DNA of 64,000 nucleotides, from the NCBI RefSeq assembly GCF_021869535.1, contig NW_026262690.1, forward strand, positions 40,300,001 through 40,364,000. The letters run 5' to 3'. This document shows, in pieces, positions 21,400 to 64,000 of this stretch (its first letter is position 1; each line of letters opens with the position of its first letter). Origin of the DNA: Mytilus californianus (Eukaryota). Made by a program: the position numbers and the translations under genes. Below the pieces are notes generated by a model, which searched no databases, was not told where the DNA came from, and was given only the letters and a program-made list of their open reading frames with translations.

Positions 21400-21572
21400 A
21401 CCTTAGCTGTATTTGGCAAAATTTTTGGTCGTCAATGCTCTTCAACTTCGAACTTTATTTGGCCTTTTTAACTATTTTTTTTTATTCGAGCGTCACTGAT
21501 GAGTCTTTTGTATAGAAGAAACGCGCGTTTGCCGTACAGAATTTGAAGCATGGCGTCTATGATGGGTTTATT
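21400..21572 (+). mobile_element. Partial retrozyme-like monomer with a degenerate hammerhead (21490-21536)
   Basis: gcgtca CTGATGA gtct tttgtat agaa GAAA c gcgc g tt; stem II closing pair lost. Confidence 0.72.
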
Positions 21573-21709
21573 CAAAGCAAGACACTCTATCTCCATGTGA
21601 AGCATGGCATCTATGATGGGTTTATTCAAAGCAAGACACTCTATCTCCATGTGAAGCATGGCATCTATGATGGGTTTATTCCAAGCAAGACACTCTATCT
21701 CCATGTGAA
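21545..21709. repeat. 54-bp unit x3, made of a retrozyme terminus plus flanking DNA
   Basis: aagcatggcatctatgatgggtttattcaaagcaagacactctatctccatgtg repeated three times. Confidence 0.9.
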
Positions 21710-22648: not shown

Positions 22649-22690
22649 ATCACTGAAGAGACACTAATTGTCGAAATCCGGATATGGTGT
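22649..22690 (+). ncRNA. Minimal type I hammerhead of a second repeat family, intact core (predicted cleavage after 22684, AUA)
   Basis: atca CTGAAGA GACA-ctaat-TGTC GAAA T-CCGG-A TA tggt: perfect 4-bp stem II, palindromic loop III, 4-bp stem I. Confidence 0.7.
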
Positions 22691-25485
22691 ACAAAAAATC
22701 TTTGCACCTTTGTTTGCGGTATACCATCTTTGCCGCAAGTTTATTGTTTTCTGTTTGGTATTAAATTTATAGTTAAGATCCATGTATTACACCTTGTGAT
22801 CCGTTTATTTGGCAATCGCCAATGGCATTCAGCAGGATTTAAGAACATTTGTTGTTCGACTTGTTAGTCAAATGCGTTTTGTTAAAATATACTTTTTCAC
22901 TTTTTGGTCTTTTGGAAAATGTTGTTTGTGCTGTATTTAGACCCCTCTAACAAGAAATTTGTTTTGCATGCACACGTATAAAAATTGCGGTTTTTATCCA
23001 ACGCAATCATAGGTTTGAACGTTGTTTTCAATTTAGACTTCTTTATAATATATATTTATATATGTTTTGCTCGTTGATAAAGGCCATGCGGTGACCTATA
23101 GATGCTTACATCCACGTAATTTGGTGGATAAGTGTCTCTTTGACAATCATACCACCACCTATTTTTTATAATGATAAATATTTCTCGACCATTAACACTT
23201 GCTTTGAAAATGAAAGTTTATTATGTAAATAGTTTGAAATAAATAAACAGTTAATCAATCAGTAAATAAAAAGATATAAAAAATATAGAATGAAAAGAAA
23301 TAATGAAAAAACCTAGCACCTAACGGTGCACGTCAATATCGGTCAAAATATACTTCATGGTCTGTGGTGTTAACGTACAATCATCCACAATGTCCATACT
23401 ATCCGTTTCATAATACCTCCATTGTTTTACATAAAAGGCAGCACATAATATTCTATAGAAAACAACAGACTATTCTAATTATTGTTCAAAGACGTCACTA
23501 CATTGTAGAGCATGACAGTTCCTTTTTTTCTTTCCTTTCAATACTTTCTCTACAAAACAAAGAAAGTTATCGTTATGCAGCCATTGTACTGATTGATATT
23601 TTAATCTTAGATACATGATTTTTTTTATTAGTTGTTATTGTCTTTGAACTAGCTGTCAGTAACTTCGAGTACTCTCAGATTTGTATTTTGTGTCTTTTTT
23701 GTTGTTATGGGTGTATAAATACCCTGCCACGTCCGGTCTATGTTTTGTTAGATTTTTTCTGCTATGTATCGATCTGATGAATTAAGCCCTTTTCAACTGA
23801 TTGTCGTTGGTTCATGTCTGTCATATTTGTTTTTCGTCAATTATTTTATTAAATTAGGCCGTTAGTTTTCTCAATTGAATAGTTTCATATTTTTCATGTC
23901 GGGGTCTTTTATAGCCGACTATACTTTTCTCATTGTTGAAGGCCCTACAGTAGCCTATAATTTCTTGCATCCACTACATTTGAAGTTTGGTGGATAGTTG
24001 TCTCATTGGCAATCATACCACATCTCCTTATTTTCATATATGTCGAAATAATCAGCATTTAATATTTATGTGCCAGCCTTATGTTTCTCATTAGAATTTC
24101 ATTCAGGGGTCAACATGTGCATGTGTCACTAACCTTGATTGAATAGAAGAATTTATTGCAAACAAAATTAAATAGGATCCACTCATTACTGTCAATATAA
24201 AAGTACGGAGATGTTGTATGAGTACCGATGAGACAAATATCCTTAGACCAAAGGACTAAGAGGTAAACAACTATAGGTTATCGTGCGACACTCAACAATG
24301 AGCAATACCGTATAAGTCATGAAAACATATTCAACCCAGTAGTTTCAGAGTATGAATTATTTACGTCTGGTTAAGAAGTCAACTGTGTAATGAAAAAGAA
24401 ACCTTTATATCTAGTTTTTACAAACTATTCCTTTCACAAATCTGTTATTAAAGTAGGCACACTTGAAACTGAAAAAGTTAGATCTTAACTGATGGATGTC
24501 TTTTCTACACATTTTACTGTTTTTATCAAAGGCCAGATGTCTAGTAACTGCTTGACTTCGTCCGTCCTATCCGTGCTTCCGTCTTTGAAACATCTGAATA
24601 GTTTGAGCCATATTCAACAGTTTTCTTTCAACATTATTATTCAAACTTTGCACAGCTTGAAGATATTCAATGGCCATTTTTGACAGATTTTAAATTAGTT
24701 TAGATTTCCCATGTGTTGAACTTAGTTATTTCTGTCACTGAATACTATATCAGAAACCTAGTTTGTGTCATCTGTAACGCTTACAATTTTCCATCAACAT
24801 TATTCAAAACAGAAGTTGCAAAGCAGGTACAAACACGGTATCTTCTAGTGAAACATAAAGTCAGTTAATCGTTTTTTTTTTTAATGTCCGTTTATATGAA
24901 TCGATTCGTTTTGAGTCTTGATTAACTTCATAATCTGGTTCAGTTGAAAAAGTCTATGAACCTTTTGATACTAAAATACGTGGTATGCATGCTCTTTTTG
25001 GTTCTGATAACCTTATCTTTTATATAACAAATAAGATTGAGAATGGAAACAGGAAATTTGTCAAAGAAACAACAACCCGACCAAAGAGCAGAAATGTCGA
25101 CTCTCTGTTGACCTCTAGGTATCTTTTGATTATTTGGTCGTTGGATTGCTGTCTCATTGACGGATATCCCACATCTTCTTTTATATACACGACTTGCATA
25201 CAGATTTGTATAGTGCACAGGAAATTTTGTATAACAGAAATGTTTAGAGGTATATTTATATAAATTAAACACAGAATCTTCTATATGCGTGTTACTGTTA
25301 CAGTTGGGATCAGTTGTAACCTCACTTAAAATCTGTCAGGAGGACAGGGTAGAATGTTCTAGTGTAGATCTGCTGCTTATAACAGGTCTATGACAGATTA
25401 TTCTGACAGTTATAGAGAGGTATAAACTGATCACAACTGTATTTACAGAAATACACGCAAACTTTACTTTTCAATATACACTTAC

Positions 25486-28400
25486 CTTTCCATATGGTGT
25501 TGATACTTGGTTCCGGTTTACAGGTGTTCTCAATCTAAAGACAACATCAGAAAAATGTTTTACGTTTTTTGTTTGGAAATTTGCCAGGCTAGTTAAATAA
25601 CAATATCAATGTTGGAAAGGAGTTAAAACATCAAATTGCACAAACCGTAAATTATCCCAAGTATTCAAAACCACAGTAGATTTAGAAAATGAATATGACA
25701 TTCCTAAAACAGACAAGCAACACAACAAGACAATGTTGATTACTCAGCAAAGCCCCTTAACAGGCACTTCAAAAATACATTGCAAGATGGTTCAACTATC
25801 AAATAAGTATTATGTTTCCTTATTCTCAGAGCAGAGACAAAACAATCAATACATAACAATAAGAAGGGCACAAAAATACAACCAGTTTTTAAGCACATCG
25901 TCACGTCAAAAAGAAACCAAGGAATGTCAAGCTTCTTGTTAGATTTAATACTATAACTTCAAAATTGTTCTCAAAAACGCAATCTAATTATGCAATGCAC
26001 ATAAAACAACTAATAAAACTTTATTTTAAAGTCGATTGATAAATAGTACGGACAAACTTCATTTGCATATTTTAATAAAATTATCTGTACAGATACAAAA
26101 AGAGAAATATCACCATAGTTTGTGATGATAAAATGCTGGAAACATCATTTGTCACGTTAAAATTGTAATTTACAACATTGTTTTGTATATATTAAATCGG
26201 CGAACAAATCACGTCTAAACAAACAATGAAAAAAGTTCGTTTGTAACAAATATTTCGATTTTTGATACTGTTGAATGCATAGGTCTTTTATAGTGATTAA
26301 GATTATATTACAATCTTGACTGCTGTACTCCAATTTTGACATTTTTACCTTCTACGTCTGTTTGTTTTGCTCACACATTGTTGTCAGTATAATGGAATTC
26401 TATGCGACTGTCATACAAGTGAGATGTTTAGCTAGCTATAAAACCAGGTTTAATCCACCATTTTCTACATAAGGAAATGCCTGTACCAAGTCAGGAACAT
26501 GACAGTTGTTTTCCATTCGTTTTGAATTTCCCTTGGAGTTCGGTATTTTTGTTATTTTACTTTTTACATTATGTAAATATAGATACCTCTTTTCCTCCTC
26601 TGACAGTAGTATCTTCATGGCTTCAATTTCTGCTTTAAGTGGTATGTACGATTCCTTGGATACATTCAATTCTTGCAGTTTTGCAAACACAGCATTTTGC
26701 ATGTCTTGCAATCTTTTCTCCATTTCACGAAGCTGAGCAGCGGCCATTAACCTTTCTTGTGCAATAAGATCTCCCAACGAAATTTTTTCTTGTGATAAAG
26801 AGCTTACCTAAAATAATTCATTAAATATAACGAAGTAATTTACAGGCAATTTGCTGTTTATTAATTGTAAAAAGTACATTTATTTGTTTGTCATCTATAA
26901 AGAATCTGTAATATGCAGTGAATAAAGTTTACATTGGACAACCCTTTTATTTTTGTAATGGAAATTGTTATTGTTTGTTACAATCTTGAATACGAAGGTT
27001 AATGTTTGTGAAAATTTTAACGAAATTGTGATGTTAAAGTTCATAAAATGTACAGAAGAGATAAAAACAGCAACTTCATATGTTGTTATACTTGTTATTC
27101 CATTCTCCTTCGTGTATGTAAAATGTATGCTTGTTGATATAGCTGCAAGTGTTCAATGGGATACCAGCAAGTTTTGTTGAAAATTGAAACGTGTATATCA
27201 GAAATCTTTTAGCACGAATTATAGTCATATCAAATATGCAACTACATGATTGTTGGAAGATTGAAATATTCAGTTCATTTTGTACATTTTTCAATGATTT
27301 TTAACATCATATTTAATATGAACATATATACTTGTGCTTCAAGGTTGGCAATTTTAGCTTTTAAGTCACCGAAATTTCCAAAAATTCCAGCCTTCTCCTT
27401 TTCTAGTCTCGCTAAAGCAGCGGAATCACTCTCCATTTTGACTCTTAAAGCAGAGATCTGAAAAAATAAAATAATTAGAAACTTATTGAAACAAAATTAA
27501 GATAAACGTAGATTATAAGAACCAGTATCATATATACTGAAAAATAATAGCAAAACGCACATTGAATAAAGAACTATCCCATTGATTTGATTGATTTTGT
27601 TTTTTGGTGTTTTAACGCCACTTTTAAGCACCGCTTTTGGACTATTTCGTGGCGGCCAATTTTTATTGGTGGAGGAAGCCGGAGTGCCCGGAGAAAACCA
27701 CCGACCTTCGATAGGAAAACTGACAATCCTAGTCAATTAAGAGTGGAGTCGAGTGCACCCGCACGACTGGGGTTCGAACTCACAACCTCAGTGTTGACTG
27801 GCTAGTGATTACAGTAGTAACTACTTAGACCACTCGGCCATCGAGGCCCCATTGACAAATTTTAAATATACATTTGTAAAATTATTTTGATTAACATTTT
27901 TTTTTTTATTTGTTAGATTGAAAAGACTTATAATATGTGTATTACGCTGTCATTGTGTTTCCTCTCAGTCTCAGCCTGGTGCTTCCTCATATCTTCTTCT
28001 GCTGCTTGTCTTACTTGTCTCAGTAACTGGGGTATATCTGTGTCCGATTTGTTCTGCTCTCGGATTTTAGTCTCCAGATTCACTATAGTAGTTGTTGATG
28101 TATCTAAACGTTGTTTTAAATCATTCAATTGCTGTCTTAGAATGTTATTGTCAAATTCTGCTTTCTTGGAATAGGCAGCAAATTTTTCCTCAATATCTTT
28201 TCTGATTTGCACCTCTTTCTCCCATCTTCAACGTTAAAATGAAAAGGAATTTGAAATAACTGTGATGTGACCTTAAGACAAAGGACAAAGAACACAAAAC
28301 TGAAAACCGACTTTTCTTATGCTGTTCAATTAAAGCTCTCGTTTGCAATATGCTTAATATGACTTGAAATTATCTTTAATATGCAGTGATTATGTATAAC

Positions 28401-31400
28401 AAATATGAGACGCTTTGCCTAGTCGAAGACCTAAATTCGTCCATTTCATTTTTCCTTATCACAAAAAGAAGAACTCATTTTGTTTAAGTTTAAATCTTTT
28501 TTTATTGTCCTTTGTATTTGAATGAAAGGGCTATTCTGTTTAATGGTCTCAGCTGGCTTCCTGAAGGTTGCAATTTTGACATAAAACTATTGGTTTTTGG
28601 AAAAGATACCCTTTCCTACGATCAAAATGTGCAAATTGTTAAACAAGTCTTAAAATTTATGAAGAGATCCTTGGTGTTATAATATCAACATAGGTAAAAC
28701 GCACATCGTCATCCTAATCTCTGTCGTTCTTTCTTTGTCCCCTTTCCTTTTTCAGTATAGTTTAGTAATATTTATGTTATTTATATTATATAATGCTTGT
28801 TTACATTCAGTTCGTATTGTTATATATGTTGTATTGGGATGAAGACTTTATTAGTATGTTTTATTTGTATCTGATCCTATTTGCTGTGAACGAATTAAAA
28901 CATGTTTAAACCATGGAAGTATAATACTTCCATGTTTAAACCATGGAAGTATAATACTTCCATGTTTAAACTAAACAAAAACTGATGGACTTAGTAAAAC
29001 TATGCTGTAACATGGTGTATTATTTTGAGCTTAGCTTGTCTATTCCCCCATTAAAATAGAATGGAATTATTGTTTACCTTCCTTTGAAATCTTCTCTTTC
29101 TCTGGAGAAATCTGCTACTTGTTTTCTTAGCGTGGGACTCTCGTCGACAGGTTTTGGTGCTGACTTTACTTTCGTGAGTTCTTGCTCTAGACAACTTATC
29201 TTCAGTTGATAATTATTGATACTATTGACTAGTTCGTTGTTCTTATTTATTTCTTGTGTCAGCCTAATACAGAAACGTTAATGAATTACAACAAATAAAC
29301 ACAAAGTACACTGGATATGAATAGATCCCTGTTTAGAAACATTTACTAAATTGATTTAATTATGAAATCTTTTACATGTATCACTGAATCTTAGAAATTC
29401 AAATTCAAATTCAAAATTCAAATTCAAATTCTTTCTTTCCTAATCACAGGGCCCTTTCAGGCATTACAAAATTTAACACGATCATTCACACTTTCATACC
29501 AATCTTTCTCACTCCGCTCGCTCTGATTATGTTAATTAGATACAGTACATTAGAACATACAAAACAGTTATTTACCATATGAGTATAAACGACTCCGGGT
29601 GCGGGAGTTTCTCGCTGCATTGAAGACCCATTGGTGGCCTTCGGCTGTTGTCTGCTCTATGGTCGGGTTGTTGTCTCTTTGACACATTCCCCATTTCCAT
29701 TCTCAATTTTATTTTAAGTTCAGAAAGTGAATAAAGAGAGATAACTCTGAGTTTAATGTCGCAGCTTGAATTTTCAAGCAAAATCAATTTGATTTTCGTA
29801 GGAGGTAGTGGATTTAATGACTCTAGCTTATTTAAGATTTGCATTTGACCTTTTTTTTATGCCAATGATTTTCTATTAAAATAAAACATTACCTGTTTTC
29901 CAAATCCTTTATAGCTTGTAAATAGCTACCATTTTGTTGTTGATATTTGTTCTTTTCAGAAACAGTATCTTGAAGCTGTCGTCTGCAAAAAATCAAACTA
30001 GTATATATCGCTTGTATATTGACATGGTCTCCCTATTGCATATAATCTGTTATATTCTGCCTCCTAATCGTCTTAATAGAGAGTTTGTTTGCCTTAAAAA
30101 AATCATTTTCTTCACAGCGAACAACGAATATCAAACATTATGAAATCGTATAAACTTGTAAGTTAAATATAAATACCATTAAGAAGGCGGAATAACTCAA
30201 TAAATCTTTTCTGTTTACTGGGCTACATGGACTGAAGAAAGCAAAATCACATCATTTGATTAACCTTTTTGTATATTAATACAAGGGAACTTTCAAAGAA
30301 CGTAAAACTTTTTGTTGTGTCAGAAGCGCTGGATTTACTATCATTGGAGACGTTCATACCCAAAATATTGAGGGTCGAGGATATATAATTAACTTAACAA
30401 TTGAAGAAATACCAGTATATGATCAAGAGGTGCCAAAAAGAATATCCAAATCCATTTAAGGTTAGATTTGCCATAGGGAGTTGGAACCTTAGTTTTTTTA
30501 ATAATTCCTCAATTTAGCAATGGAGAATTTATAATAATTACAAAAACATGTTATAGATCTTGTCACTACCGAAGCACCGACTACTGTTTTGATAATACTT
30601 TCTGCGGGGACTAACAGTACAACAGCAATGATATAGACCGAGTGCTAGAAAAGTGAGAATAACTCTTATTAATAGATTCGTTACGTCTAAAGCGCTTTAA
30701 TGGGTTTACTTCAATTGGAACACTCATACCTAAAATATTAAAAGCCAAGGATGAACAACTATACATAAACACGTGATGATCAAAAGAGGTTTGCAAGAAA
30801 TATACAAATCCATCTATTTAAAGGTCAACTTTTAATGAAGAAATTGGAAATTTATAGTTACACGAATTTTGTTTTTTGAATTTTCTGTGTCATTTTAAAT
30901 GCTTTAAATCTTAGTACTTTGATTTATTGGGAGATAAAAATATAGTTTGAAACTGTAAACGATTTGATATTTTCCATTTGATAGAATGACATTCAAATGA
31001 ACAAAATTGTTAGCTTTAAGCGTAGTATTAATTTTCAGAGATACTGGAGTATTTTGTCTTATTATTTCATCCAGATTTGGCGCTTGCAGTTGCAACAAAA
31101 TGATTAGTTGTCAGCATCTTTTCAGTTTTTGAAAACATATTCAACTATATTATCAAGACATTCTAGAAACGAAAATTTCTTACCAAGAAGTCACACGAAT
31201 TTTGAATTTGACAAATATTTTATGATGTTTCTAGTGAAAATAAACATTTTCCACGGTTCATAATCATTGTAGAGAATTGAATAGAATATACAAACATTCT
31301 AAACATTTTAGATATATAACTTTTGATTAGTCAATGCAACAGAACGATTTAGTAGACTGTAGAACGACTTTAGACTAAATTTAAAAGTAGACCACATCTT

Positions 31401-34400
31401 TGTTTTTTTTTTTTTTTGTGCGAGTGTGTACGTATGTATGCTTTGCTTAAGAAGTGTGTTGATTATTTTAAGCCCTCTGGGTGTAATCTCAAAATATGTT
31501 CGTATCGTATAGAAACACATGTATTTCGCATGGATTTCGGTCTTATGCGTTTTGTACTACCACTGGGTAGGTACCGTTGTTTAGTGAACTATAAGTCCAC
31601 GAGAACGCAATCTGCAAAGTGCACGGTGCTTTTCTTCTGACAGGATTAAAATAATTCATTTTGTCTTAAAATTCCAGTTCACAAATATAGAATTGTATTT
31701 AAACTAAGGTTGCAACTTCCCCCAGGCAAGGATTGCATTCCATTCGACGGCTTTTTAATTAGTGACATATATACAGTCATTTAGTCCATGGTGGAGAGTT
31801 GTCTCATTGGCAATCATACGACAACATGTACATCTTATTTTCATATATTTTGGCTGGATTTGACACATGTTATTCCAAAAACATGTTACATCGGGATAAG
31901 ACAGGTTTTAATGTCTTTTACTTTTCAGAACTTTCAAACTCGATTTTAACAGAAAGATGGAACTTGCTTTGTTGAATAGTTTTGTGCATCTAAATGAAAT
32001 TTAGAAAAGTTATACGATAGAAATATTATTTAAGGTATGTTAACAATATACCGCCACCTTAGATTGTAAAATAGCAGTACACAATCGGTCTAGTTCTTTG
32101 CTGAAATTTGCAAATTTTGAGACAGATTGGCAATTAATGTGTAAGACTTTATTCAAATTAAGAAAAATAAGTAATGTATTGCATTATTTAGACTGTTTTA
32201 ACAAATACCAAATATTTGTTATGTTTGATTCAATTTTTCAACTTAGCCTTGTAAGGAGAGATACATCTTTCAATAAAAAAATAATATAAATGAATGTTCA
32301 TGAAATGTTCATGTTTTACTTGTAGCAAGAACACAAGTTCGGTGACACAATTTTTTATTTCTATTTTCTTAAAAGAACATTGTAAAACCTATCCCATAGA
32401 TTTCTGTTTTTATTCACAAGAAAAATGTTTGAAAAATAGGCACGGTGACCTTTACTTTTTATTATATTTTTGAAAAAAAATGATAAAATCTACATTTTGG
32501 CAGAGTATGAGAAAATTCTATCTGAAGAAATATTTAGTGATGACCGATACCTAAACCAATTGTTTGGTATCCCCATTGGGTATAAACTTTTTTTTAGTAT
32601 ATGAATAAAAGTAGATTCGCAGTTATCGTCATTGAAACAGCAACACAACGATAATAAAAAAACACCATCTGGTGGGTATTACTTGACACAAATTATCCAT
32701 TTCTATGTATTGAATTGACAGGTACAGAGTCAAACCGGATCAAACAGCCGTCGAAGTTTTAGCAGGTCATAAAATGTGATATTTACTGTATTTTGTAAAT
32801 AGACAGAAGGAAACTGTGTTCCAAAACAATCAATCAGTAAATTTTACATACTCCTTCTTCGTTAACTTTTTTATTTAGTAATTTTATAAACAAATATGTT
32901 TAACATATTCAAGTATATGTTACCTTATATTTTGAAGTTCAGATTCATACATTGCTTTCAGTTTTCCCAATTCATCTTCCAGTATCTTAATAGACTGGAT
33001 GAAAGCAGCAGAATCTGTTTGTCCATTTCTTTCTCCAAGCTGTCTTACTCTAGTGATGTATTCAGATAATCTATTATTCAGTCTCAGTAATTCATCCTTA
33101 TCGGACAATCGTCCGAATGAAGATTGTGGTCTGTAGTTGGTTGTTGGTGTTCCCGGGCTGTACTGTAAACTTTGTAGTCCCTGAGTTGCTGATCGTTCCA
33201 GTCCATGAGTTGCTGACCGTTCCAGTCCATGAGTTGCTGACCGTTCCAATGATCTCGACAAATCACCAACGTTTATTTTGCTCTGCTTATAAGTTGGGTT
33301 TAAGCTTTTCGACATAGAATTACTTTTAGCCAAAGATTTTCCTGGATAGCCATAGTATGTTCTGTAGGTCGTGTTGAAAGAACTTAGAAAAGATAAAATA
33401 AAAATACAACAGCCTCATAAAAAATGTTTCTAAAAAAATAATTTACTTTTCGTGAAAATTTGAAGCTAAATCAAATGAAAGAAACTAAGAAACTCTTGTC
33501 ATAGTTTTTCCACGATGGAACCTATCAGTAGGGACATTGAAATCATCTCATTTGTCTTGAAATTTTGTTCTAATTTGCCCCCTTCTGTCAAAGGTATCTG
33601 TCGTTTATTTAAAGGGTATACATCGTTAATCTAAAGGATAACACTACCTTCTTTTCATTTTTTAAAAAAATTATCTTAATTCATCACCAAATTCTTTAAA
33701 GGGAAAAAAATGAAAGACAGCCACTTTTCTGGTTTCTTACTTGGAACAGAATCCTTGTAATTCTGTTAGAATTGTGTGTTTTGACTAGATAATTCACCGT
33801 TTTCTTTGTAATGAAAATATTGAATTCATTTTAAACTGAGATGACCGCCAAATACACGCATATCAGTGCAGGAACACATTTTTACTAAGAGAGGAATAAA
33901 AGTCCTTACCAACGACGGTGTGAAGGAAGTCTGTTTGGTACAAATAAAGGAATTCACGAGAAAAAAATGCACATTTGGTCCCTACACAAATGCCGACTGT
34001 CTGATGAAAAACACATCAACTAAACATACATTTATTACAAATATATTGTCAAAAAAATTACAGTTTAAAAGAAGCTTTAGCTTAAATCAAAGTGCCTTTG
34101 CAAGTAACATTTGTTTCTTTCAGAAATAGAATACTTATCATACCTGTATCTTCTTTGACCATTTTTTTTTTTTAAATTTAACCTGTTCTTTAGTTAAAAA
34201 CATGAGACAAAAAGTTAGAGAAGTCAAGTGTAATTTTATTGCTTTAGGAGAGGGGCCTAGATTGTTCGTACTCTTCAGATCTTTTGAGAATCCACATATG
34301 ATTCATATCACCTCCATTGTAAACCTGGGTAGGGTTTTGATTGCTGTTTCGTAAAGCAACTGGCAGACCCGGTAATATGACATTGTTTGCTTTACACGCT

Positions 34401-46700: not shown

Positions 46701-49700
46701 TGTTTAAACTAAAACTTTAAATTTTAACACAAGTTGCGTAATGTATTTTTGCAAATATGAAACCAAAATTTTTATATTAACATCACTGTGAATGGACAAG
46801 AAGTCACAAGTTATTTGACTAAGTAATGATGGAAAATAGTTTTCCCTAAAACAAATACTAGCTCGCTGCATAAAAGAACAATACTCCGGTTATATTTTGT
46901 AGACCGCTTGAGGTCTCTTACCATCAACATACTTCTAACAACGACCGATAATACAGCCGACAATCCTTTTTCACGTATCGAAATCAATTTGATAACTCCT
47001 ACCTAATAATGCCACTTCATTCCAGTCAAATCAGGAACGGGAATAATTTTATATGAATTATGGATATTGTTATAGAAAAGACATTCCAAACTGAAAAAAG
47101 TTAAAAACTTAAAATGCAAATAACAAACTTTTATGCATTTTTTTTAATTTTTGTGATAAAAATTTATTGAACATTTCCATGGCTGAGGCAACAAATAAAT
47201 GATACTAAAATTACCATACGCAAAATCTTTCAAAAAAAATTATTGAAGGACTATTGTGTGCTTAATGTCCAGTGGCAAATATCTCATGCATATTTAAGAC
47301 GAGGACAAATTAGCAATTAATACAATAGGTAGGTTATTCAAGGTAGATCGGAAAATTTCGACTGAAACTGGAAAATGAGGGTATCTTGGATACAGCCATT
47401 TTGCCTTGTAACAGTCCACCTATGGACCCCTTTGAGAGTTGTTACAAGAGCTCTTTTACGTGAAGAGAGCACTTACCCAACATTGGGCACGGGGTTTAAC
47501 ATCCCCATTCCGACCGGACATGGCTACGCATTTATACATTCCGCACAGTCAAAAGGGTGCCCCTCTATATCAAGGATTTTACCGCATGACAGGAGAAGTC
47601 CAGGGATGACCATGTTTATATACCCTTTCCCTGAATTACAGGAAGTCATAACGTTAATTTTTTTTACTTAATTTGGTATGACTAATTTGATTTGGTGTGA
47701 AGACCGAAAGTGAAATGAAAAGAAAACTGCTGAAAGTCATGTTAACGGTTGGTGATAAATAAAAAACATAGTTTTATTTTTCTTTTGTCATCAGTTGTAT
47801 TACCTCTTTTCCAAATCCTTAGAAGTTTGAATAAAACTTCCGTACTGTTGTTCCAAACTGTTCTTATCTTGTACACTACCTTGTAGTTGTCCTCTGTAAA
47901 AGTAGGTACATGAACACTTAATTCATTCAACTATTTATATTTAATATTATTTTTTCTTGAAACATGGAATTTAAATGGATTCTTTCACGAATCGTGGAAT
48001 TAAGATGGAAATTGTTTTGCTTTTACTACAATTACCTTTCTTTAGAAATGTTTCAAATTGAATCCAAATGTTCAAAAGGTAAATATTTCGTTCTTCTTTT
48101 ATATCCGTCAAATTTTATACTATATGTATGGCTTTGAAATATTTCGATTAAGAATATATAATATTTCAACATAAATCATGCTTTTACAATTAAAGTCATA
48201 CATCATATAGCATGCTCATTGCATTAGTTGATTTGAAACGGTTTAAATGGCTGTTTAAAATTGAATTCCATTTTGATATAATTCGAGTTTCATAAATCGA
48301 TAAATCTATTACGTTAGGGCTTAACAATATCACTCTGTAAGTGGGTATTTTTCAGCAAAGAAAACATAAAAGTATTCTTTATAGTACAAACTTATGTATT
48401 TGACATTTCAAAATCAGTGGTTTTAGTTCGTCAAGAACATTTCTGTATAAGTGGTATAAATACCTTTGTTTCTACTCTCTTCCAACTTGTGGTTTCTATT
48501 ATCCCTTTAGTATCTTCTTTTTTTAATAATATGAAAACAAATGTGCTTAACTTTAATAAAATTTAAAAATTTAAAGTTTAAATTCCCTTGCAATATAGAA
48601 AAAAAAAACCACAAAAAATGAGAATAGGAAGAACCCTTGGATGTCTTTTTTGTTCTTTTTTGTTGTTGAAAAGAAAAAATTCCAATTGTAAAAATTTGTA
48701 TCGTACTTATTTTTAAATCTACAATACCTTAAGTTTGCGAGTTCGTATTCATATAAATCCTTCAGTTTTGCGACTTCGTCTTCCAATATTTTAATTGATT
48801 TCAGGAATGCAGAGGAATCGATCTGTCCACGTTGTTCCCACAGCTGTCTTACTTTGGCTATATAATCTGACAACCTATCATTTAGCCGTTGTAGCTCTGC
48901 CTTGTCCTCTAACTTAACCGTTCTCTTCATCCCATAGTCATTACCTGACCCTGTCTTTACGTAACTGAGGTTTGTCACTCCAGTATTAAAGTCATCTCCA
49001 CCAGTGGAAGTATATGTCTGTTCCCAAGCTTGCTGTGTTGACGGATAATATGATGGTGACCGAAATGGTGTTGTTCTAGGACTTGCAAAGGCATTTGTAA
49101 CTGTCTTGTATTGGTAGGGTTGGTCATAGCTTTTGTACATGTAATTACTTTTGTTGGGTTTGTATGTGCAGCTTTTGCAGACCTTGTCATTATAGAAAGA
49201 TCTGTAACTGGTATCATATCTGAACAAAAATATTAGAAGAGTTTAAAGAGTACCAGTGAAAGTTACTGTAATATTACACAAATGTGCATTGTTTTTATAC
49301 GAATGTTTTAACAAATGTTTGTTTCAAAATACTTTAGTTCTTTGTATCCCTTTCCTAATTTTATGAGGCTTTAATCACAATTGTTTTATGTGGTAATAAT
49401 TTAGCATGCAATTGACTATTATATTGATTTAATAAATTCGGGATAATCTCTCTCCCCTCAACATGTTCAGTTCAAATTATTATTCCTAACTGTGATTCAA
49501 ACATGTCCATCGACTACATGTCACAAGTCTTTTTATATGTTTGTCACTCTGACATGATAGACCGTTTGGAATGTTTATTATTGATTAATTATGACATTAA
49601 ATAGATGGTTGTTAAACTATCTTTGAGAAAACATCAAGACGATCTGGTTTGGAGATGGTTAATAACTTGAATATAGTCCATACGATTACAACACCAATCA

Positions 49701-56342: not shown

Positions 56343-59300
56343 TCATTTTGCAACAGAAAATTTCATGGACACTATATCAGCAAGTCCTGCTTCCATGATT
56401 TGTCCTTCTGTCACTGGCCCTTGACCGTCAGGTGTTCCTGTCAAAACAACATCTCCTTCCTCTAATGTTATATATTTACTGATGTAAGAAATGACTTCTG
56501 GGACAGAGAATATCATATCAGAGGTACTATCGTCCTGTTTTATAACGCCATCTACTTTTAACCATAACCTTAAATCTTGATAATTTGGAACTTTTTCTCT
56601 TTCAATAAAGTCGCTAACTGGACAGGAAGTGTCAAATCCTTTGCTAAGAAACCATGGCCGAGAATTAGCTTTTGCATCGTTGTGAAAGTCTTTAGCGGTC
56701 ATATCTAGAGCAAGAACAAAGCCACCAATATAATCATCGACATCTGAGACAGCAACGTTGGAACATTTCTGCTTTATGACAACTCCTAGTTCAACTTCAT
56801 GGAACAATAGATTACAACCTTCAGGAATCTGTAAGAAAAATAGAAACATATATTAATTCACAGTCAAGTGTATATATATTTATACATATACAGATTTTCA
56901 TCCGACCAGCATGTTACTTCCACCCACACATAAAAAGCCCAAAATATACCATTTAAGTAGTGTCCCCTGTATCAAATTAATATAATTCAAGTACTAACGC
57001 TTAAGTTGAATTTCTCGTGCTGATTGTTGAAAAAGCGATACGAAATGAAAAGTTTGATAGATAATGCTTTCAGTCTTAACTTACTAAGTGATTTTCTCGA
57101 ATTAACATATAAAAAATGCAAATGATTCGATACATCACGATTTAATATGTTCACGAATTGATTTCCCGCCTTTTCTACCCAACCATGTACCGTATGATGT
57201 ATCATGCTTAAGCCATCGTTGAAGCCATTATTCAAAGAGTTGTTGTGATTATTGTTATGTTTTAAAAGAATTACATACACAAATTGATTGTCCTTCGGTA
57301 ATATATGCAGTTGTTGGCTTTGCAAACAGGCTTGGCGTCTTCGGATTAGGTATTCCTTGAGCAGCCGTAAGACCTCTGTAAAATCAAACTTAATTAAGAT
57401 TGTTTATAAGTCTTAAAACAGTGTATGTATTTCATTAAGCTTTCAAATATTCTAACAGACTTAGTCCAGTATAGCGTTTACTGGTGAGGCTTGGTGGTTT
57501 TGATTGCCTCGATTTGGACATCAATCTCTAACATTCAAACACCTTCAAACAGATACACAAAGTAGTCTACTTAGATGCATCAATTGCGCAATCAAGATTA
57601 ACATGAGAAGAAAAATGATCGAGAAATGGAACTATCGTGAGTTATGGCATTAGGTGAAGTACAGTGACTCTACGAGGAAGATTATTTTAGTGTTTTTTTT
57701 TTGTATTTGTATTTAAGTATAGTAAATATGACATTGTTATAGTAGAGGCAATCAAAACCAAATAAGTCGAAGAAAGACCGACAGTACCATGGCCAAAACC
57801 AAATAAGTCGAAGGAAGACCGACAGTACCATGGCCTAAACAAATAAGTCGAAGAAAGACCGACAGTACCATGGCCAAAACAAATAAGTCGAAGAAAGACC
57901 GACAGTACCATGGCCAAAACAAATAAGTCGAAGAAAGACCGACAGTACCATGGCCAAAACAAATAAGTCGAAGAAAGACAGACAGTACCATGGCCAAAAC
58001 AAATAAGTCGAAGAAAGACCAACAGTACCATGGCCAAAACAAATAAGTGAGAAGAAAGACCGACAGTACCATGGCCAAAACAAATAAGTGAGAAGAAAGA
58101 CCGACAGTACCATGGCCAAAACAAATAGACAAAAAAAAAAAGCCAACAAATCACCACACAGAAAAATTGAGAAACATAAACTAATAAAATAAACCAGGGG
58201 TGATCTCAAGTGATCCTACAGGATTAACAGTTCCTGTATATCTAGAGTGACGTTACATCCGTCGTTTTACTTTATGTTATATTCTTTGGCGATAATGCTT
58301 CATACCATAGCAGATTGGTCGATGATTCTTAAGTAACCATAAGACATAACCATTTTTAAAGCATCAACATAAATCATTTATTATATATTATATATTTCAC
58401 AACCATTAACATTGTCGAATGTGAAAGTTTGAAATCGAGAAGTGTTTTGTGATAAAGATGGACAAGATCATGACCGATAGAAACAACACATACATTGAAC
58501 ATTAAATAATCACAAGAAACAGTACAGCACAGACTTTTAAAAACTTGTATGAACTCGTTTGATCCAACTCCCTCAGACAAAGTTTACCAGAGATGGATTT
58601 GGCTATTCTTTTTGGTCTCTTTTTGTCTTATAGCTCTTCACGTATTCAAGTAATTATACATCCATCGCCTACATATGTTTTGGTTTGACAGTTCGCGATG
58701 ATGGCAAATCAAGAAAAGTGAGTTGGACGCACCAAATAACAATCTAATGAAAATATAGATCTTTGATTTCGTTATACTCATTGACACAAGTTACGCTATA
58801 TCCATATTTTAATTAGATTGCACCAAATAAATAAGTTGTTATTTTTATTTGATACGGATTCCTGTTCGTGTATAGTGTTTGACTACTTATTGAATATAAC
58901 TACTAATAAATATTACTCTACCACATATGGATGTGGTGTACGGCGACTTATAGTTGCTTCCATGTTGGTCTCTTTCAGAACGCTCGATAGTACTACCGCT
59001 TTTTACGAGGGTTCACCTTACGAATCGTTTAGTTTGTATGGTTTTGTTTATTAACATCTCGTTTGTTTTCGAAATTGTTTCGTGTTGGTGCGTTTGTCCT
59101 ACTATCTGCAGGTGTTTTTATCGTCCCTTGATCTCTGTAGTAGTCTAAAAAGGTTATCTTCCATTTTATTTTGTTCAAATCTAGATTTCACAATAATATT
59201 CCAAGTGGTTTTTTTTTGGCAGACCGAATTCTTTAAAAATTCTTCAAAAAAGTACTTTCCTTTTTTTTTACAAAATAAAGTATCATTCCAAGTTAGTCTT

Positions 59301-59679
59301 AAAAGTTTATTTGAGTGGATAATGCAACACGCAAACATAAAGTTGTTGTAGACAATATTCAGATCAACGTAATTTTTTAAATAACAAAATATCGCCATAT
59401 TTTCATATCAAATATTTGATTAAATGTAAATTAAACGAAAAATAAATATAAAGTGTGAAAAGGGGTGCCATTGTGGCATCAGAGTTAAAATGAACCAAAA
59501 AATGAGAAATATGATATCAAGTACCTTAATGATTATTCCAGGTCCTTTGTCTCACCTGTTGAATGGTTACATCAAATAACTGATTTTTATAGAATAGAAG
59601 GTTATACTAACTTGTAGTTTCGGCAGACTGCAACTACTTTCTTCCCAATTTCTCTAAAATGTTTCAATCGTTCAGTCAT
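56343..59679 (-). CDS. FAHD1: FAHD1-like fumarylacetoacetate hydrolase domain protein (acylpyruvase/oxaloacetate decarboxylase family), 216 aa. Exons 59679-59612, 57375-57279, 56828-56343
   Basis: MTERLKHFREIGKKVVAVCRNYK|GLTAAQGIPNPKTPSLFAKPTTAYITEGQSIC|IPEGCNLLFHEVELGVV...LDMTAKD...PWFLSKGFDTSCPVS...GDVVLTGTP. Exons 68+97+486 = 651 nt in frame, GT-AG introns, metal-binding ExE...D and the Lys123 equivalent present. Confidence 0.95.
57760..58122. repeat. 40-bp minisatellite x9 in FAHD1 intron 1
   Basis: aaataagtcgaagaaagaccgacagtaccatggccaaaac repeated; accounts for the spurious overlapping ORFs at 57687-58209. Confidence 0.95.
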
Positions 59680-60071
59680 CGCGATGGCCAACTACCAATG
59701 TACCATACATGTATATGAACCTGTTGATTTGTGTTTCACCTTTCTTAAATTTATTATGAATTATACGTGTTATCAATCTCAACTTTGATTATGTTATCTC
59801 ATCTTAAATTATTTTGTTTGTTTAAAGGCACTCACCGTATGTCGGTTGATATCCTCAATCAAGATTTTATTAGCGGTTACAGTAAAAAAAATATTTTTAA
59901 TTATGCTCTGATTTTCTAAATACTTTGGGTTACCGAGTCTTCATGATATGTTCATGATGTTATACTGAATACCTGCTGAAATCATAAGTATATCTTTAAA
60001 TAAAGCTGAAAATTTAAATTATTGTTCCCCCCATGTCTATTGTTAGCTAATGTGGAGTGTTAGCTGTATAT

Positions 60072-60272
60072 GAGGGGCCTGATGGGTTATTTTCGTTCTT
60101 CGTGATCGGCGCATTTTCGCTATCGTGATCCGTTTTTCTACAGATTTAATTTTTTTCTATATTTTCGTGATCCGTGATCATGAAAATTTATTTTTTGTGA
60201 ATCGTGATTGACAAAAAAATCAACTCGTGAATCGTGATGAGACCCCCCCCCCCTCCCCCCATCAGGCCCCTC
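60072..60272. mobile_element. 201-bp MITE, 15-bp perfect TIRs, 6-bp TSD gtatat
   Basis: gaggggcctgatggg (60072-60086) / cccatcaggcccctc (60258-60272); gtatat at 60066-60071 and 60273-60278; internal cgtgat repeats. Confidence 0.85.
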
Positions 60273-61537
60273 GTATATTCCACCACTAGATGAATCGTCG
60301 TCCGTTTCTGATCCATTCTTCTGGAGAATCATTTAATTTATAAAAAAAAAACAAATTTAGCAGATGAATCAATTATGTTATCAGTTTCACTGAGTGAGTT
60401 TTGTAAAGTAGTATTCTCATTTCTTGTATTTTCCCAAAAGCATGGTCAGAGAGCTTTGTTACCCTTGTTTTTTTTAAGCGGTGACAGAGCAGACACATGA
60501 ACTCTTAATTTGAACAGCCTCTTCTATGTAAATGATTTTAGTACACATTATAAATCGGCAGATGGCCTTCAGACATCCGTAGTATGGATAGACTTTCAGA
60601 ATATTGTAAAATGTGGGGGTTGAGTTTAATAGGAAAAAGACAAAATGTGAAGCCTGCAATAAGTTGGAAAAGGTATATTAAAAGAAATCCAATATAATAA
60701 TAATGTCATAGAAAATGCCAAAAACAACCGCTACATCGGAGTTATATTTCACTGCTCTGACAGTTTTAAAGAAGTCATACAATCCAAATACCAAAAAGGC
60801 TTAAAAGCATATTTCAAACATTGCAAAGCATTTGAGAATCAAAAACCTAAGATGAAAAGTAAAATCACAAAAATACCGAACTCCGAGGGAAATCAATACG
60901 GAAAGTCCCTAATCTAATGGCAAAACCGAAAGCTCAAACACATCAGACGAATGGATAACAACTGTCATATTCCTGACTTGGTACAGGCATTTTCTTATGT
61001 AGAAAATGGTGGATTAAACCTGGTTTTTTAGCTAGCTTAACCTCTCACTTGTATGACAGTCGCATAAAATTCCATTATATTGACAACGATGTGTAAACAA
61101 AACAAACAGACATAATAGGCAAAAATGTCAAAAATAGGGGTATAGCAGTCAATATTGTGTTATAATCTTAATCACTATAAAAACAAACAAATATTTAACA
61201 AAGAAACACAAAAAGGCATACAGACAAAGCACATTCGTATAAACGAAAGACGAGAATACAAAAATCTACCATAGCACAATAACACAATGACATGTTTGCA
61301 TGTATTTGACTATTTAATTGTATAGCACTAAGCTAGAGTTGGGGGATTCTCCAAAAAGATACTTCACATACAGTAACACTTTCAGCTATCATTATTATTT
61401 TTCAAAATATATATAAAAATCTTAAACAAGAAAAGTTTCCGATTTATAAATGTATATTCATATTTATTATGTGTAAATTGGAAAACTACAAATATTGATG
61501 TTATGGAAGATGTCGGTCATTATCTATTTTTTTCTAA

Positions 61538-61585
61538 GCTTAAGCAAGGATTTGTATAGTATACTATACAAATCCTTGGCTTAAG
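61538..61585. mobile_element. 34-bp perfect palindrome (17+17) flanked by 7-bp direct repeat gcttaag
   Basis: CAAGGATTTGTATAGTA|TACTATACAAATCCTTG at 61545-61578; gcttaag at 61538-61544 and 61579-61585. Confidence 0.75.
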
Positions 61586-62180
61586 TTAAAATATCTTAAA
61601 ATACTAGACAAATTTAAAGAACAATAGTGATGTCTTATTATCTGCATGCCATCAATGTAGACATACATAAAAAAAAACAGTCTACATAGTGTGCTGTACA
61701 TAGTTTGTTGAAATACAATATAACAACAAAATTTTCTCTACAAAATTACACTTATACTCTAATATTATTAGAGGTGTTCCTGTCTATAGAAAGCTAATAA
61801 AAAGAAGAAATAGGAATCATCAGAACAGCATGAGCCGGACAAATCATCATGGCTAGGAAAAACTTCTATTCATTTTTTGACATCTTGATAAAAATACTTA
61901 AAGATTATTAAATTATAAATTTAAAGACATATTTTTTCATAGTTAAGATTGAAATATAACAAAATTTGGAAAATGAGATTTTTCTGATATGTTAAAATAT
62001 TAAAGAGTAATAAATTGCGTACTGTATATAGATTGTTTGAATCTCAATTTAAATTTGAACCATATTTAGATTTCATTGTGATTTCTTTCGACTAAGTACA
62101 CATAAATAAGAAATATAACTTAGAAGATAAATACCCTTTGATGTGAACGGCATAATATGAACACTTCATCATTTATACCA

Positions 62181-62227
62181 TTTATACCAGAGACATATAA
62201 TACATGCATATATGTCTCTGTTTATAC
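62181..62227. mobile_element. 33-bp hairpin insert flanked by 7-bp direct repeat tttatac
   Basis: CAGAGACATATA-atacatgca-TATATGTCTCTG at 62188-62220; tttatac at 62181-62187 and 62221-62227. Confidence 0.72.
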
Positions 62228-62686
62228 CGTTTAAGATTTTGAGACGAAGTTGGGGCGAATGGATTTTTGGGCGAAAATTGACACGCTAGTTTTAAATGTG
62301 AGGGCCTAGAATTTATTAGTTCTCCATCTTCATAAAAATGGAATTTCAAAAAAAAGCCAAATAACGCACAGCAAAAATAAAAACCAGAAAAAATGTCATT
62401 TATAAAAGTTGAGTATTAGTTAGATGACATGACGAAATATTGTGGCGAATGTTTTTTGGGACGAAAACGACAAGCTGAAACTCTTCTTTAAGAAGGGTTG
62501 AAAAAGGTATAAAAAGCCGTAAAATATATTTTTCTGGTGTTGTTGTGTTGCTGTTTGAACAACTCTACATGACTTACGAAAGAAATATTGATTAGCTAGC
62601 AATAGGAAATGAATCCTCTAACGTAAATATTCTGCTTAAATTATATGAGTGGAACACGATTTTTGTATTTCACAAAATTGACCTTA

Positions 62687-62745
62687 ACTAAACCTGGGAA
62701 CAGTATATCTAACTCAATATAATATATATATGTTCCTGACTAAAC
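62687..62745. mobile_element. 45-bp degenerate hairpin insert flanked by 7-bp direct repeat actaaac
   Basis: ctgggaacagtatat...atatatgttcctg at 62694-62738; actaaac at 62687-62693 and 62739-62745. Confidence 0.55.
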
Positions 62746-63000
62746 TACATCCCCTATGATCATGCTATCCTTTTAGGATACTTTGTGTCCGAATCGGTTT
62801 TCTAACCGCCCACAGTATTCAAAAATATATTAGACAGCCACAGGCCATGTGTCCGAGTGGTTGATGATATTGCGCATTTCATGATCATGTTATTCAGCAA
62901 TGTAAGATCAACAGAATTTGAACTTCTACTTCTACTGGATAATGGCCACAATCAACAAACTGAATATTTTGCCATGACTTTTGTGCGGAAATTGACTAAT

Positions 63001-63082
63001 ATGCATGTTGCGTATTGCATGTTGCGTGTTGCGCGTTGCATGTTGCATGTTGCGTGTTGCAATTTGCGTGTTGCATGTTGCA
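63001..63082. repeat. 7-bp microsatellite (gttgcat/gttgcgt)n
   Basis: Read directly. Other microsatellites: (aat)n 9637-9678, (ga)n 43703-43732, (ta)n(taga)n 6248-6281. Confidence 0.9.
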
Positions 63083-64000
63083 GAACATTACTGTTATTAT
63101 AAGGACTAATAAAAACATGTTTCAAACGTAAGATGAGCACCCTTGTCAATGACAATTTTCATAATGTTTTGAAAAATCGATTCAAAAGCATTTACTTAAC
63201 ATAAATGACTTCAATTTTACGTCATGAAATATACTGTATTATTATGCCAGAAAAAATTCTTATCTTCAATACAAGAAGCTTAGATCTTTGCCTGTGACAG
63301 TAGTAATTTTACATCAGGAGACCTGTTTTGTGTGTTCCTTCTACAGCTACCAATTGAAATTAGATCAACATGATCAATTGGTATGACTTGGTTTCGTTAC
63401 TATTACAGTTTGTTACTTCCACTTTTCATTATTTAGTTTGGATTATTGTATATGGGAAAGTTTAGAAAGTGAATGATTTCCAAAGGGCTCCCGCCATTAG
63501 ATTCATATTTATGTAAAAACTTCTTCTAAGTCTTATAGAGGGATGCCTTAACTTCATTTAAAGGTTCAGTGGAAATCTGTCATCAGGTCTTAAAATTCTG
63601 TCTGTCAAATACTCCCCAATCATCTAATAAATTATATCATATACCTTCAAATGTAACTGTTGATGACCTGTGTTGATTAGTTTATTGCAAACTTCATATT
63701 ACTTTAATTCCATAAAATTGCAAGATAAACTTTGTCCACAGTGCACTGCAGATGCGGTCTATTTACATACAAGAGACAGTTAATTTGATGCAAAACAGAA
63801 CTGTATTTCAAGTAATCTTTAACATATAAATTGTGAAACAATTTTAACTTTTTTTAAAACATTCTGTCACTTTATGATAAAATTTGGAATTTCATAGATC
63901 ATGACCAATACGATATACATATCAACGTGATCTTAATACTAATATTTGCGGAAACTAGGTCTATATCTAAAATTACACTTAGACTTACGATAACAGTTGA

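What the first reader, a model, noticed from the sequence alone, without database searches (positions are those of the whole stretch)
61538..61585. 17+17 bp perfect palindrome with a 7-bp target duplication: candidate P-superfamily excision footprint
Seen: CAAGGATTTGTATAGTA joined to its exact reverse complement, flanked by gcttaag on both sides. Established: Drosophila P transposase cuts with 17-nt 3' overhangs, so the donor site keeps about 15-17 nt of each terminal inverted repeat between the duplicated target; Galileo and 1360/hoppel (P superfamily) make 7-bp TSDs. Inference: this is the repaired scar left by a P/THAP9-type element, which would imply the 17-nt staggered cut operates in this lineage.
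Basis: partly seen in the sequence, partly recalled or inferred. Interest (0 to 1): 0.8.

Follow-up and report, generated by a model that had tools for sequence, protein, structure and literature searches.

The report
Transposon excision scar in mussel DNA
This 34-letter perfect palindrome between two copies of gcttaag is most likely the scar left when a jumping gene cut itself out of a mussel chromosome, and many such scars record how that gene's enzyme cuts DNA.

Summary
Window 61545-61578 is a perfect 17+17 bp palindrome between two gcttaag copies, with a chance expectation of about 4e-9 per window.

Another individual of the same species carries the exact empty site: one gcttaag and no palindrome. 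So this is a recent, polymorphic insertion-type event with a true 7-bp target duplication.

The 17-mer is the tip of a roughly 36-nt terminal inverted repeat. Four longer element ends in mussel-derived public contigs share it.

Eleven other short TIR-TIR inserts of this family, seven with exact 7-bp TSDs, have near-identical arms. Almost every one has a different junction: blunt, short overlap, or filler. That points to independent end-joining repair, not a copied mini-element. Read pile-ups show the palindrome is multi-copy in four related species.

Two further CA...TG families of the same kind lie in this window, at 28912 and 62188.

- No transposase was found, so P/THAP9 membership is untested.
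- Arms of 19-21 nt are common, so the cut stagger is about 17-21 nt, not proven to be exactly 17.

The scan had already noted at least seven similar palindromes elsewhere in this genome, all unchecked first-reader notes.

The parts
61538..61544 (.). left copy of the 7-bp target-site duplication, gcttaag
   Evidence: Run X2 contig record 27 carries a single gcttaag at this site.
61545..61561 (+). 17 nt of the left terminal inverted repeat, CAAGGATTTGTATAGTA
   Evidence: It is identical to the first 17 nt of the long element ends L013, L067, L052 and L087.
61562..61578 (-). 17 nt of the right terminal inverted repeat, the exact reverse complement, joined blunt to the left arm
61579..61585 (.). 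right copy of the 7-bp target-site duplication, gcttaag
62181..62227 (.). second insert of the same kind from another family: tttatac, then a 33-bp CAGAGACATATA...TATATGTCTCTG insert (62188-62220), then tttatac
   Evidence: The pile-up depth is about 100 times single copy, and the indels listed there lie within 62203-62208, around the insert's centre. The insert is present in the X2 contig record 29.
28905..28971 (.). third family: the 23-bp insert CATGGAAGTATAATACTTCCATG occurs twice in tandem, with each copy bounded by tttaaac (three copies of the 7-mer)
   Evidence: TRF finds period 30, 2.4 copies, 100% matches.

Best explanation
This is a donor-site scar (excision footprint) of a cut-and-paste DNA transposon family of mytilid mussels. 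The family has terminal inverted repeats of about 36 nt beginning CAAGGATTTGTATAGTA and makes 7-bp target duplications. The inferred history is as follows. An element inserted at a single gcttaag and duplicated it. Its transposase later cut it out with a long stagger, so each chromosomal end kept about 17-21 nt of the repeat as a 3' overhang. Host end-joining then sealed the two identical, non-complementary overhangs. At this locus they were joined without loss (17+17), which gives a perfect palindrome by necessity. The only transposase chemistry known to leave that much of each end behind is the P-element/THAP9 type, and the 7-bp TSD fits the 1360/Galileo branch of that superfamily. Shown here: the structure, the empty allele, longer elements with the same ends, and junction diversity among sister copies. 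Inferred: the order insertion then excision, the stagger, and the P-type transposase.
For: 1; contig record 27 from another individual of the same species (run X2; 483 nt) joins 61537 to 61579 with 0 and 2 other letters on its two sides. This is an exact empty site. A k=31 graph cannot jump across a 7-bp repeat, so the junction must exist in reads.
2; four long ends (L013, L067, L052, L087) share the 17-mer plus a conserved continuation ([A]GAA[G/C/A]GGAT..GAATCTCG). L067 and L087 are 70.7% identical over 205 nt (E 2e-17).
3; eleven other short inserts of this family lie at unrelated loci. Seven have exact 7-bp TSDs that differ in sequence between loci, except that gttttat occurs at two. Arms are nearly mutation-free, but almost every junction is different: 17/18+16, 19+20, 20+20, 20+17, 17+8, and 17+filler+12.
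4; most 'fillers' are TIR positions 18-21 of the long ends, so the short forms derive from long ones.
5. No arm lies between 22 nt and the long ends (at least 147 nt held). This suggests a discrete cap rather than a continuum.
6; in four species the pile-up at 61560 is about 1000 times single-copy depth. The listed variants are a 2-nt loss (the TA-microhomology join) and +A (18+17).
7. (PMC2895639): fly P-element junctions have the same grammar, namely TSD + up to 17 nt + up to 17 nt + TSD, with blunt joins, TA/AT microhomology and templated inserts.
8. (PMC7776569) documents the 17-nt stagger. (PMC3698922) gives 7-bp TSDs for 1360 and Galileo.
9; three independent CA...TG inserts with 7-bp TSDs lie in this window, against 0.05 expected, with none at TSD length 6 or 8.
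Against: - No transposase gene and no long element with both ends was recovered. L013 holds 2.6 kb of interior without a second end or a long ORF.
- Arms of 19-21 nt exceed what a strict 17-nt stagger can leave.
- In the fly junction tables shown the blunt 17+17 join appears once, whereas here the reference-like centre takes most of the pile-up depth. That pile-up is biased towards reference-like copies, and summed depth is not a copy number.
- No allele with the full element at this locus was seen.
- The polarity of the polymorphism (insertion or precise deletion) lacks an outgroup. No contig of organisms B-D listed spans the site.
Confidence: 0.65

Rival explanations
1. It is a footprint of a TIR transposon, but not a P-type one. 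An unknown or other superfamily with 7-bp TSDs excised, and the 17-21 nt arms come from a few nucleotides of copying from the sister chromatid (aborted synthesis-dependent repair) followed by end joining, not from a long staggered cut.
For: No P/THAP9 transposase was found. Arms exceed 17 nt in many copies. Internally deleted derivatives arise this way in many superfamilies (general knowledge). A profile-based survey of bivalve genomes included a P profile, but the passages shown (PMC10294476) name no P element in its counts or its curated library.
Against: Aborted copying should give a continuous spread of arm lengths. Here about 24 arms are 21 nt or shorter and nothing lies between 22 nt and the long ends. 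Several independent copies stop at exactly 19-20. No other characterised transposase leaves this much of each end. 7 bp is a P-superfamily TSD length.
Confidence: 0.17
2. The 34-bp palindrome is itself a mobile 'TIR-only' micro-element that is cut out and re-inserted as a unit, each insertion making a new 7-bp TSD.
For: The identical 34-bp form appears to be multi-copy in four species. All copies have their own TSDs. Another first-reader note (s1-333284) proposed this for a 37-38 bp palindrome.
Against: Almost every sampled copy has a different centre while the arms are conserved. This is the opposite of what copying from a master element gives. The centres contain TIR positions 18-21 of long elements. 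A 34-bp duplex is far too stiff to bring its two ends together in one transposase complex, and a 17-nt stagger from both ends would release only two single 17-mers (inference from PMC7776569). There is no room for internal transposase-binding sites.
Confidence: 0.08
3. The palindrome is an in-situ collapse of a short foldback-like element or MITE. A longer hairpin-forming insert lost its centre by replication slippage or hairpin cleavage, independent of transposase cut geometry.
For: Palindromes are deletion-prone at their centres (general knowledge). The indels listed in the pile-up lie at the centre. Arm lengths vary from 7 to 21.
Against: The long ends are not foldback-like. Their interiors are non-palindromic beyond about 36 nt. 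Asymmetric products (17+8, 19+7, 20+17) and non-templated or templated fillers are end-joining signatures. Centre-out collapse predicts no recurrent stops at 17 and 19-20.
Confidence: 0.08
4. The structure is a chance palindrome or an assembly artefact.
For: The filled allele at this exact locus is seen only in the assembly.
Against: The chance expectation is 3.7e-9. The same sequence with other TSDs occurs in independent public assemblies and runs of several species.
Confidence: 0.01

Closest known systems
Drosophila P-element donor-site repair junctions ('footprints') after transposase cleavage with 17-nt 3' overhangs (PMC2895639, PMC7776569)
   Same: The layout is the same: TSD, up to about 17 nt of each inverted repeat, TSD. 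Both show blunt 17+17 joins, joins at a terminal TA microhomology, and short and templated insertions. Both ends start with CA.
   Different: The TSD is 7 bp here, not 8. Arms of 19-21 nt are frequent here, whereas none exceeds 17 in the fly tables seen. The fly junctions were recovered in an excision assay, whereas these are standing, multi-copy features of wild genomes. The transposase is unknown here.
1360/Hoppel and Galileo, the P-superfamily families with 7-bp TSDs (PMC3698922)
   Same: Both have a 7-bp target duplication and TIR-bounded cut-and-paste elements.
   Different: Those are insect elements, and Galileo has very long foldback-like TIRs.
MITEs (miniature inverted-repeat elements)
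   Same: Both are short, bounded by inverted repeats and TSDs, multi-copy and non-coding.
   Different: At 23-40 bp these are well below the usual size of MITEs (my own knowledge, not checked here). Each copy has its own centre, and the inserts consist only of the two element tips.
hAT/Transib-type excision footprints
   Same: Both are scars left at donor sites between retained target duplications.
   Different: Those chemistries form hairpins on the flanking host DNA. They leave a few nucleotides palindromic to the flank, not 17-21 nt of each element end (general knowledge).

Membership tests
Transposon excision footprint (donor-site scar) | The insert is bounded by an intact target-site duplication, and an allele with a single copy of the target exists | tested here: met
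   gcttaag lies on both sides. The X2 contig joins 61537 to 61579, leaving one gcttaag (record 27).
Transposon excision footprint (donor-site scar) | The inner sequence equals the outermost nucleotides of both ends of a longer element | tested here: met
   L013, L067, L052 and L087 begin with the same 17-mer and continue as a TIR of about 36 nt. L067 and L087 are homologous over about 200 nt.
Transposon excision footprint (donor-site scar) | Independent copies differ at the junction (repair diversity) while the arms are conserved | tested here: met
   Twelve inserts were compared. The ten that can be resolved into two arms have ten different arm and junction structures. The variants listed in the pile-up lie at the centre.
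Transposon excision footprint (donor-site scar) | A full element occupies the same site in some allele or relative | tested here: inconclusive
   No such contig is listed.
P / THAP9 superfamily | A transposase with an N-terminal THAP zinc finger and an RNase H-like catalytic domain interrupted by a GTP-binding insertion domain | not testable with these tools
   No autonomous copy is present in the window or the fetched loci (Pfam scans). The host genome outside the window cannot be searched. Notes s1-318234 and s1-328211 mention THAP transposase genes elsewhere in this genome, but these are unchecked.
P / THAP9 superfamily | Target-site duplication of 7-8 bp | tested here: met
   Eight inserts of this family have exact 7-bp TSDs: this one and seven at other loci. 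Two more families in the window also have them. The TSD-length histogram has a spike at 7 and zero at 6 and 8. The reference lengths come from PMC3698922.
P / THAP9 superfamily | A long staggered cleavage (17 nt in Drosophila) that leaves element tips on the donor | tested here: inconclusive
   Retained arms reach 17-21 nt and then stop, which is compatible with a long stagger. The exact length (17 or about 20) cannot be fixed from 12 biased copies.
P / THAP9 superfamily | Sub-terminal transposase (THAP) binding sites and sub-terminal inverted repeats | not tested
   A conserved GC-rich sub-terminal motif (..GGCGAGA..) lies about 50-80 nt inside the long ends. No binding data and no second end are available.
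MITE | A homogeneous non-autonomous copy family amplified as a unit | tested here: not met
   Centres differ in almost every copy, and inserts consist only of TIR tips.

The most novel reading that the evidence does not exclude
Mussel genomes carry many natural P-type excision scars from several transposon families. Together they would form a fossil record from which the cleavage stagger of a non-insect P/THAP9-type transposase (17-21 nt) and the germline end-joining spectrum of a wild animal can be read directly. That would show the long stagger to be ancestral to the superfamily. A more radical variant is that the perfect 34-bp form is over-represented because the scar itself can be re-mobilised as two single-stranded 17-mers.
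Probability: 0.45. Interest if true: 0.65.

Novelty: new member of a known kind. Interest (0 to 1): 0.5.

Why it matters
- The 17-nt stagger of P transposase is documented for Drosophila in the review I read (PMC7776569). The zebrafish THAP9 preprint cites that value and, in the passages I saw, maps no cut positions for its own enzyme.
- If these scars are P-type, the cut geometry of a mollusc enzyme can be inferred from sequence alone. The scars also give a large natural data set of double-strand-break repair outcomes in a wild invertebrate germline.
- Practically, such 23-40 bp palindromes are probably too short for standard repeat annotation (my inference, not checked). They break short-read assemblies, create presence/absence polymorphisms like the one shown here, and could be mistaken for tiny MITEs or regulatory hairpins.

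Tried and rejected
- 17-mer scan of viral contigs: 3 single hits with unrelated flanks, taken as chance matches.
- Extended-TIR 26-mer scan of prokaryotic genomes: 0 hits.
- 17-mer scan of prokaryotic genomes: 25 hits. Only L087, a very low-coverage contig in a SUP05 assembly that I take for host DNA, was read and is a real element end. The rest are single hits in named bacterial or archaeal records, taken as chance matches.
- L010 looked like a candidate with an 846-aa ORF next to the 17-mer. The ORF is a bacterial TonB-dependent receptor, so L010 is a chance hit.
- Pfam scans of the 10 longest window ORFs and the 10 longest ORFs of mussel-like loci found no THAP or transposase domain. They found only intermediate-filament, FAA-hydrolase and weak reverse-transcriptase-related matches.
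- Rfam scan of the whole window: nothing.
- Search for a second end downstream of the long ends: none in L013, L067 or L052, the only candidate (in L048) being a weak 2-mismatch match. BLAST of long-element interiors against the window gave only unrelated low-complexity hits.
- Long-range TIR plus 7-bp TSD scan of the window: only a weak AT-rich candidate at 21369-22227, at chance level.
- The search of earlier findings by sequence: blank.
- Literature searches for earlier descriptions of such palindromes in bivalves, or of genome-wide P-type footprints, found none in the held library. This is not proof of absence.
- I did not type a P-transposase query from memory, so no protein search was run.

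Full report
**1. Observation**

One search shows, on the + strand, gcttaag (61538-61544), CAAGGATTTGTATAGTA (61545-61561), its exact reverse complement (61562-61578) and gcttaag (61579-61585). A scan of the window finds no other perfect zero-spacer palindrome with arms of 8 or more, except an (AT)n run. The 17-mer has no other match, even at 3 mismatches.

From base composition the window should hold 2.7e-5 such palindromes, or 3.7e-9 if the 7-bp flanking repeat is also required. The window is AT-rich (about 32% G+C). It carries animal-type gene fragments, namely intermediate-filament and FAA-hydrolase matches. Earlier notes of the scan call the organism a mussel.

The flanks can therefore also be read as an offset extension of the inverted repeat (I1).

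**2. The empty site**

Runs holding this locus were found. Four runs were then laid on 58600-64000: X2 is another individual of the same species, and X11, X17 and X18 come from three related organisms.

X2 contig record 27 (483 nt, depth 6.8) aligns to 61262-61537 and continues directly at 61579-61780, with 0 and 2 other letters on the two sides. It lacks exactly 41 bp, that is, one gcttaag plus the palindrome. A k=31 assembly graph cannot jump across a 7-bp repeat, so reads with the empty junction must exist.

The structure is therefore a presence/absence polymorphism with a genuine 7-bp duplication, and it is probably young. This fits its 48 mutation-free positions. No listed contig from the three relatives spans the site, so the polarity has no outgroup.

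**3. It belongs to a multi-copy family**

- In the same pile-up the summed depth at 61560 is 7261 in X2, against about 7 for neighbouring single-copy contigs. It is similarly inflated in the other three organisms.
- The tool warns that summed depth is not a copy number. I take it only as 'many copies, in all four species'.
- The variants listed at this place are a 2-nt loss (20-31% of depth, 9-16 contigs per run) and an added A (6-12%).
- This pile-up is biased towards copies that resemble the window. Copies with longer centres probably cannot align, because their flanks are unrelated.

**4. Sister copies and longer elements**

An exact scan of public metagenome contigs for the 17-mer gave 71 loci. 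Most are chance hits in microbial contigs. About 17 are AT-rich mussel-like contigs.

Seven of the mussel-like contigs hold short inserts with exact 7-bp TSDs, all at different loci:

| Locus | TSD |
|---|---|
| L020 | gttttat |
| L021 | tgtagat |
| L025 | caatact |
| L028 | tgattac |
| L034 | gttttat |
| L038 | tttagag |
| L050 | atttttg |

Four more have imperfect TSDs (L012, L022, L033) or none recognisable (L011). L048 (with an exact TSD, tttaaag) and L051 keep a recognisable arm on one side only.

Three loci carry the 17-mer as the start of a long sequence. L013 and L067 continue AGAAGGATTGGAATCTCG. L052 continues GAACGGATAGGAATCTCG. A fourth long end, L087, came from a very low-coverage contig filed under a SUP05 bacterium. 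I take it for host DNA because SUP05 bacteria include mussel symbionts (my own knowledge). It continues GAAAGGATATGAATCTCG and is 70.7% identical to L067 over 205 nt (E 2e-17), with a second block near 520-570.

The source element therefore has a TIR of about 36 nt and a conserved sub-terminal region. None of these contigs reaches the other end, and none has a long ORF.

**5. Junction anatomy**

Each insert was matched to the three TIR variants:

| Copy | Arms |
|---|---|
| Window | 17+17, blunt |
| L020 | 17/18+16 |
| L021 | 17+C+20 (or 17+21) |
| L025 | 17/18+8/9 |
| L028 | 19+20 |
| L034 | 20+20 (one mismatch) |
| L038 | 20+17 (one mismatch) |
| L050 | 19+7 |
| L012 | 17+8 filler+12 |
| L022 | 19+CATG+10 |
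| L033 | 17+TTT+9 |
| L051 | 20, one-sided |

Three points follow.

- The arms are almost free of substitutions, while nearly every junction differs. This is expected for independent repair events, not for copies of a master mini-element.
- What looks like filler (GAA, TTC, AG..TCT, CTTC) is mostly TIR positions 18-21 of the long ends. The short forms are therefore derived from long ones.
- No arm lies between 22 nt and the long ends (at least 147 nt held). There is a cap near 17-21 rather than a continuum.

**6. Comparison with known chemistry**

- P transposase cuts with an unusually long 17-nt stagger (PMC7776569).
- Chan et al. list fly donor-site junctions as 8-bp TSD + up to 17 nt + up to 17 nt + 8-bp TSD. 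They include blunt 17+17 joins, TA and AT microhomology joins, and short and templated insertions (PMC2895639).
- The mussel spectrum has the same grammar. The 2-nt-loss class seen is exactly the join at the terminal TA of two 17-nt overhangs. The +A class is 18+17, using position 18 of the L013-type TIR.
- 1360 and Galileo, both P-superfamily members, make 7-bp TSDs (PMC3698922).
- The other characterised cut-and-paste chemistries that I know of (Tc1/mariner, hAT, piggyBac, Transib) do not leave this much of each end on the donor. This is my own knowledge, not a tool result.

**7. What does not fit neatly**

- Arms of 19-21 nt cannot be left by a strict 17-nt stagger. Either the cut is nearer 20 nt in some subfamilies, or the position varies, or a few nucleotides are copied from a sister copy before joining. 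Several independent copies stop at exactly 19-20, which argues for a defined position.
- The blunt 17+17 form takes most of the reference-like pile-up. That cannot arise by microhomology from longer overhangs of the four TIR variants seen. It could arise if an unseen variant read ...GTATA at positions 15-19. The data at hand are few and biased, both by my 17-mer query and by assemblers breaking at perfect palindromes, so they cannot fix the number.
- In flies the blunt join appears once in the tables shown. I do not know why it seems commoner here. A difference in host end-joining enzymes is one possibility, but I did not check it.

**8. Superfamily**

No THAP or transposase domain was found in the window or in the fetched loci. 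The rest of this genome cannot be searched with these tools. Membership in the P/THAP9 superfamily is therefore untested. The finding works like P and has a P-type TSD.

**9. More of the same in this window**

A scan for short inverted repeats with flanking direct repeats finds three independent CA...TG inserts with exact 7-bp TSDs, against 0.05 expected from Markov simulations. There are none with TSDs of 6 or 8 bp.

- This one, at 61545.
- A 33-bp CAGAGACATATA... insert at 62188-62220 with TSD tttatac. Its pile-up depth is about 100 times single copy, and the indels listed there lie within 62203-62208, around its centre.
- A 23-bp CATGGAAGTATA... insert with TSD tttaaac that occurs twice in tandem at 28912-28964.

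Earlier unchecked notes of this scan describe at least seven similar cases elsewhere in the genome. One of them involves the same CAGAGACATATA family.

**10. Verdict**

The excision-scar reading is well supported. The P-type assignment is likely but unproven, and the exact 17-nt claim remains open.

It is a new natural instance of a known mechanism. Its value is that it is abundant, multi-family and polymorphic in a mollusc. I found no earlier description in the held literature.

Noticed in passing
window 28901-28971: The 23-bp CATGGAAGTATA... insert and its 7-bp TSD tttaaac form a perfect 30-bp tandem of 2.4 copies (TSD-insert-TSD-insert-TSD), preceded by an extra CATG. This is either two rounds of insertion and excision at the same target or a slippage duplication of a scar.
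   Followed up: partly
window 62172-62187: Just upstream of the 33-bp CAGAGACATATA insert there is a third copy of its TSD, separated only by CA (tttatac-ca-tttatac). It could be a minimal 2-nt scar from an earlier hit at the same target, or a plain 9-bp tandem duplication.
   Followed up: no
window 58740-58820: An 81-bp insert has CAATCTAAT...ATTAGATTG ends and an exact 10-bp TSD, caccaaataa. It is a small MITE of a different class (Mutator-like TSD length).
   Followed up: no
window 60772-61314: An extremely high-copy repeat. Summed contig depth is 1e5-1e7 in all four runs, against roughly 7-500 for the single-copy contigs beside it. It contains ...ggtacaggcattttcttatgtagaaaatggtgg..., and inverted copies lie at about 17971-20542 and 19784-26429. 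It is probably a bivalve SINE. It has no Rfam match.
   Followed up: partly
window 60067-60277: A 211-bp unit is bounded by 20-nt inverted repeats (TATATGAGGGGCCTGATGGG / CCCATCAGGCCCCTCGTATA, 95%). Its pile-up depth is about 26,000 in X2, so it is a high-copy MITE.
   Followed up: no
L051 (reverse strand, about 4658-4700): A one-sided scar sits inside a tandem-repeat unit. Exactly 20 nt of the left TIR are retained, while the right arm and most of the right TSD are deleted, as seen by comparison with the neighbouring intact unit.
   Followed up: partly
window 48571-49227 and 32920-33333: Two minus-strand ORFs match the start of the intermediate-filament rod domain (Pfam Filament, E 9e-8 and 4e-5), suggesting paralogous filament-gene exons about 15 kb apart.
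   Followed up: no
L013, L067, L052, L087, about 50-80 nt inside the long ends: All four long ends carry a GC-rich motif (..GCGGCGAGA.., ..GGCGCGAGATTT.., ..GTGGCGAGG.., ..GTGGCGAGAA..) that can pair with the ..AATCTCG.. at the inner edge of the TIR. It may be a sub-terminal hairpin or a protein-binding site.
   Followed up: no
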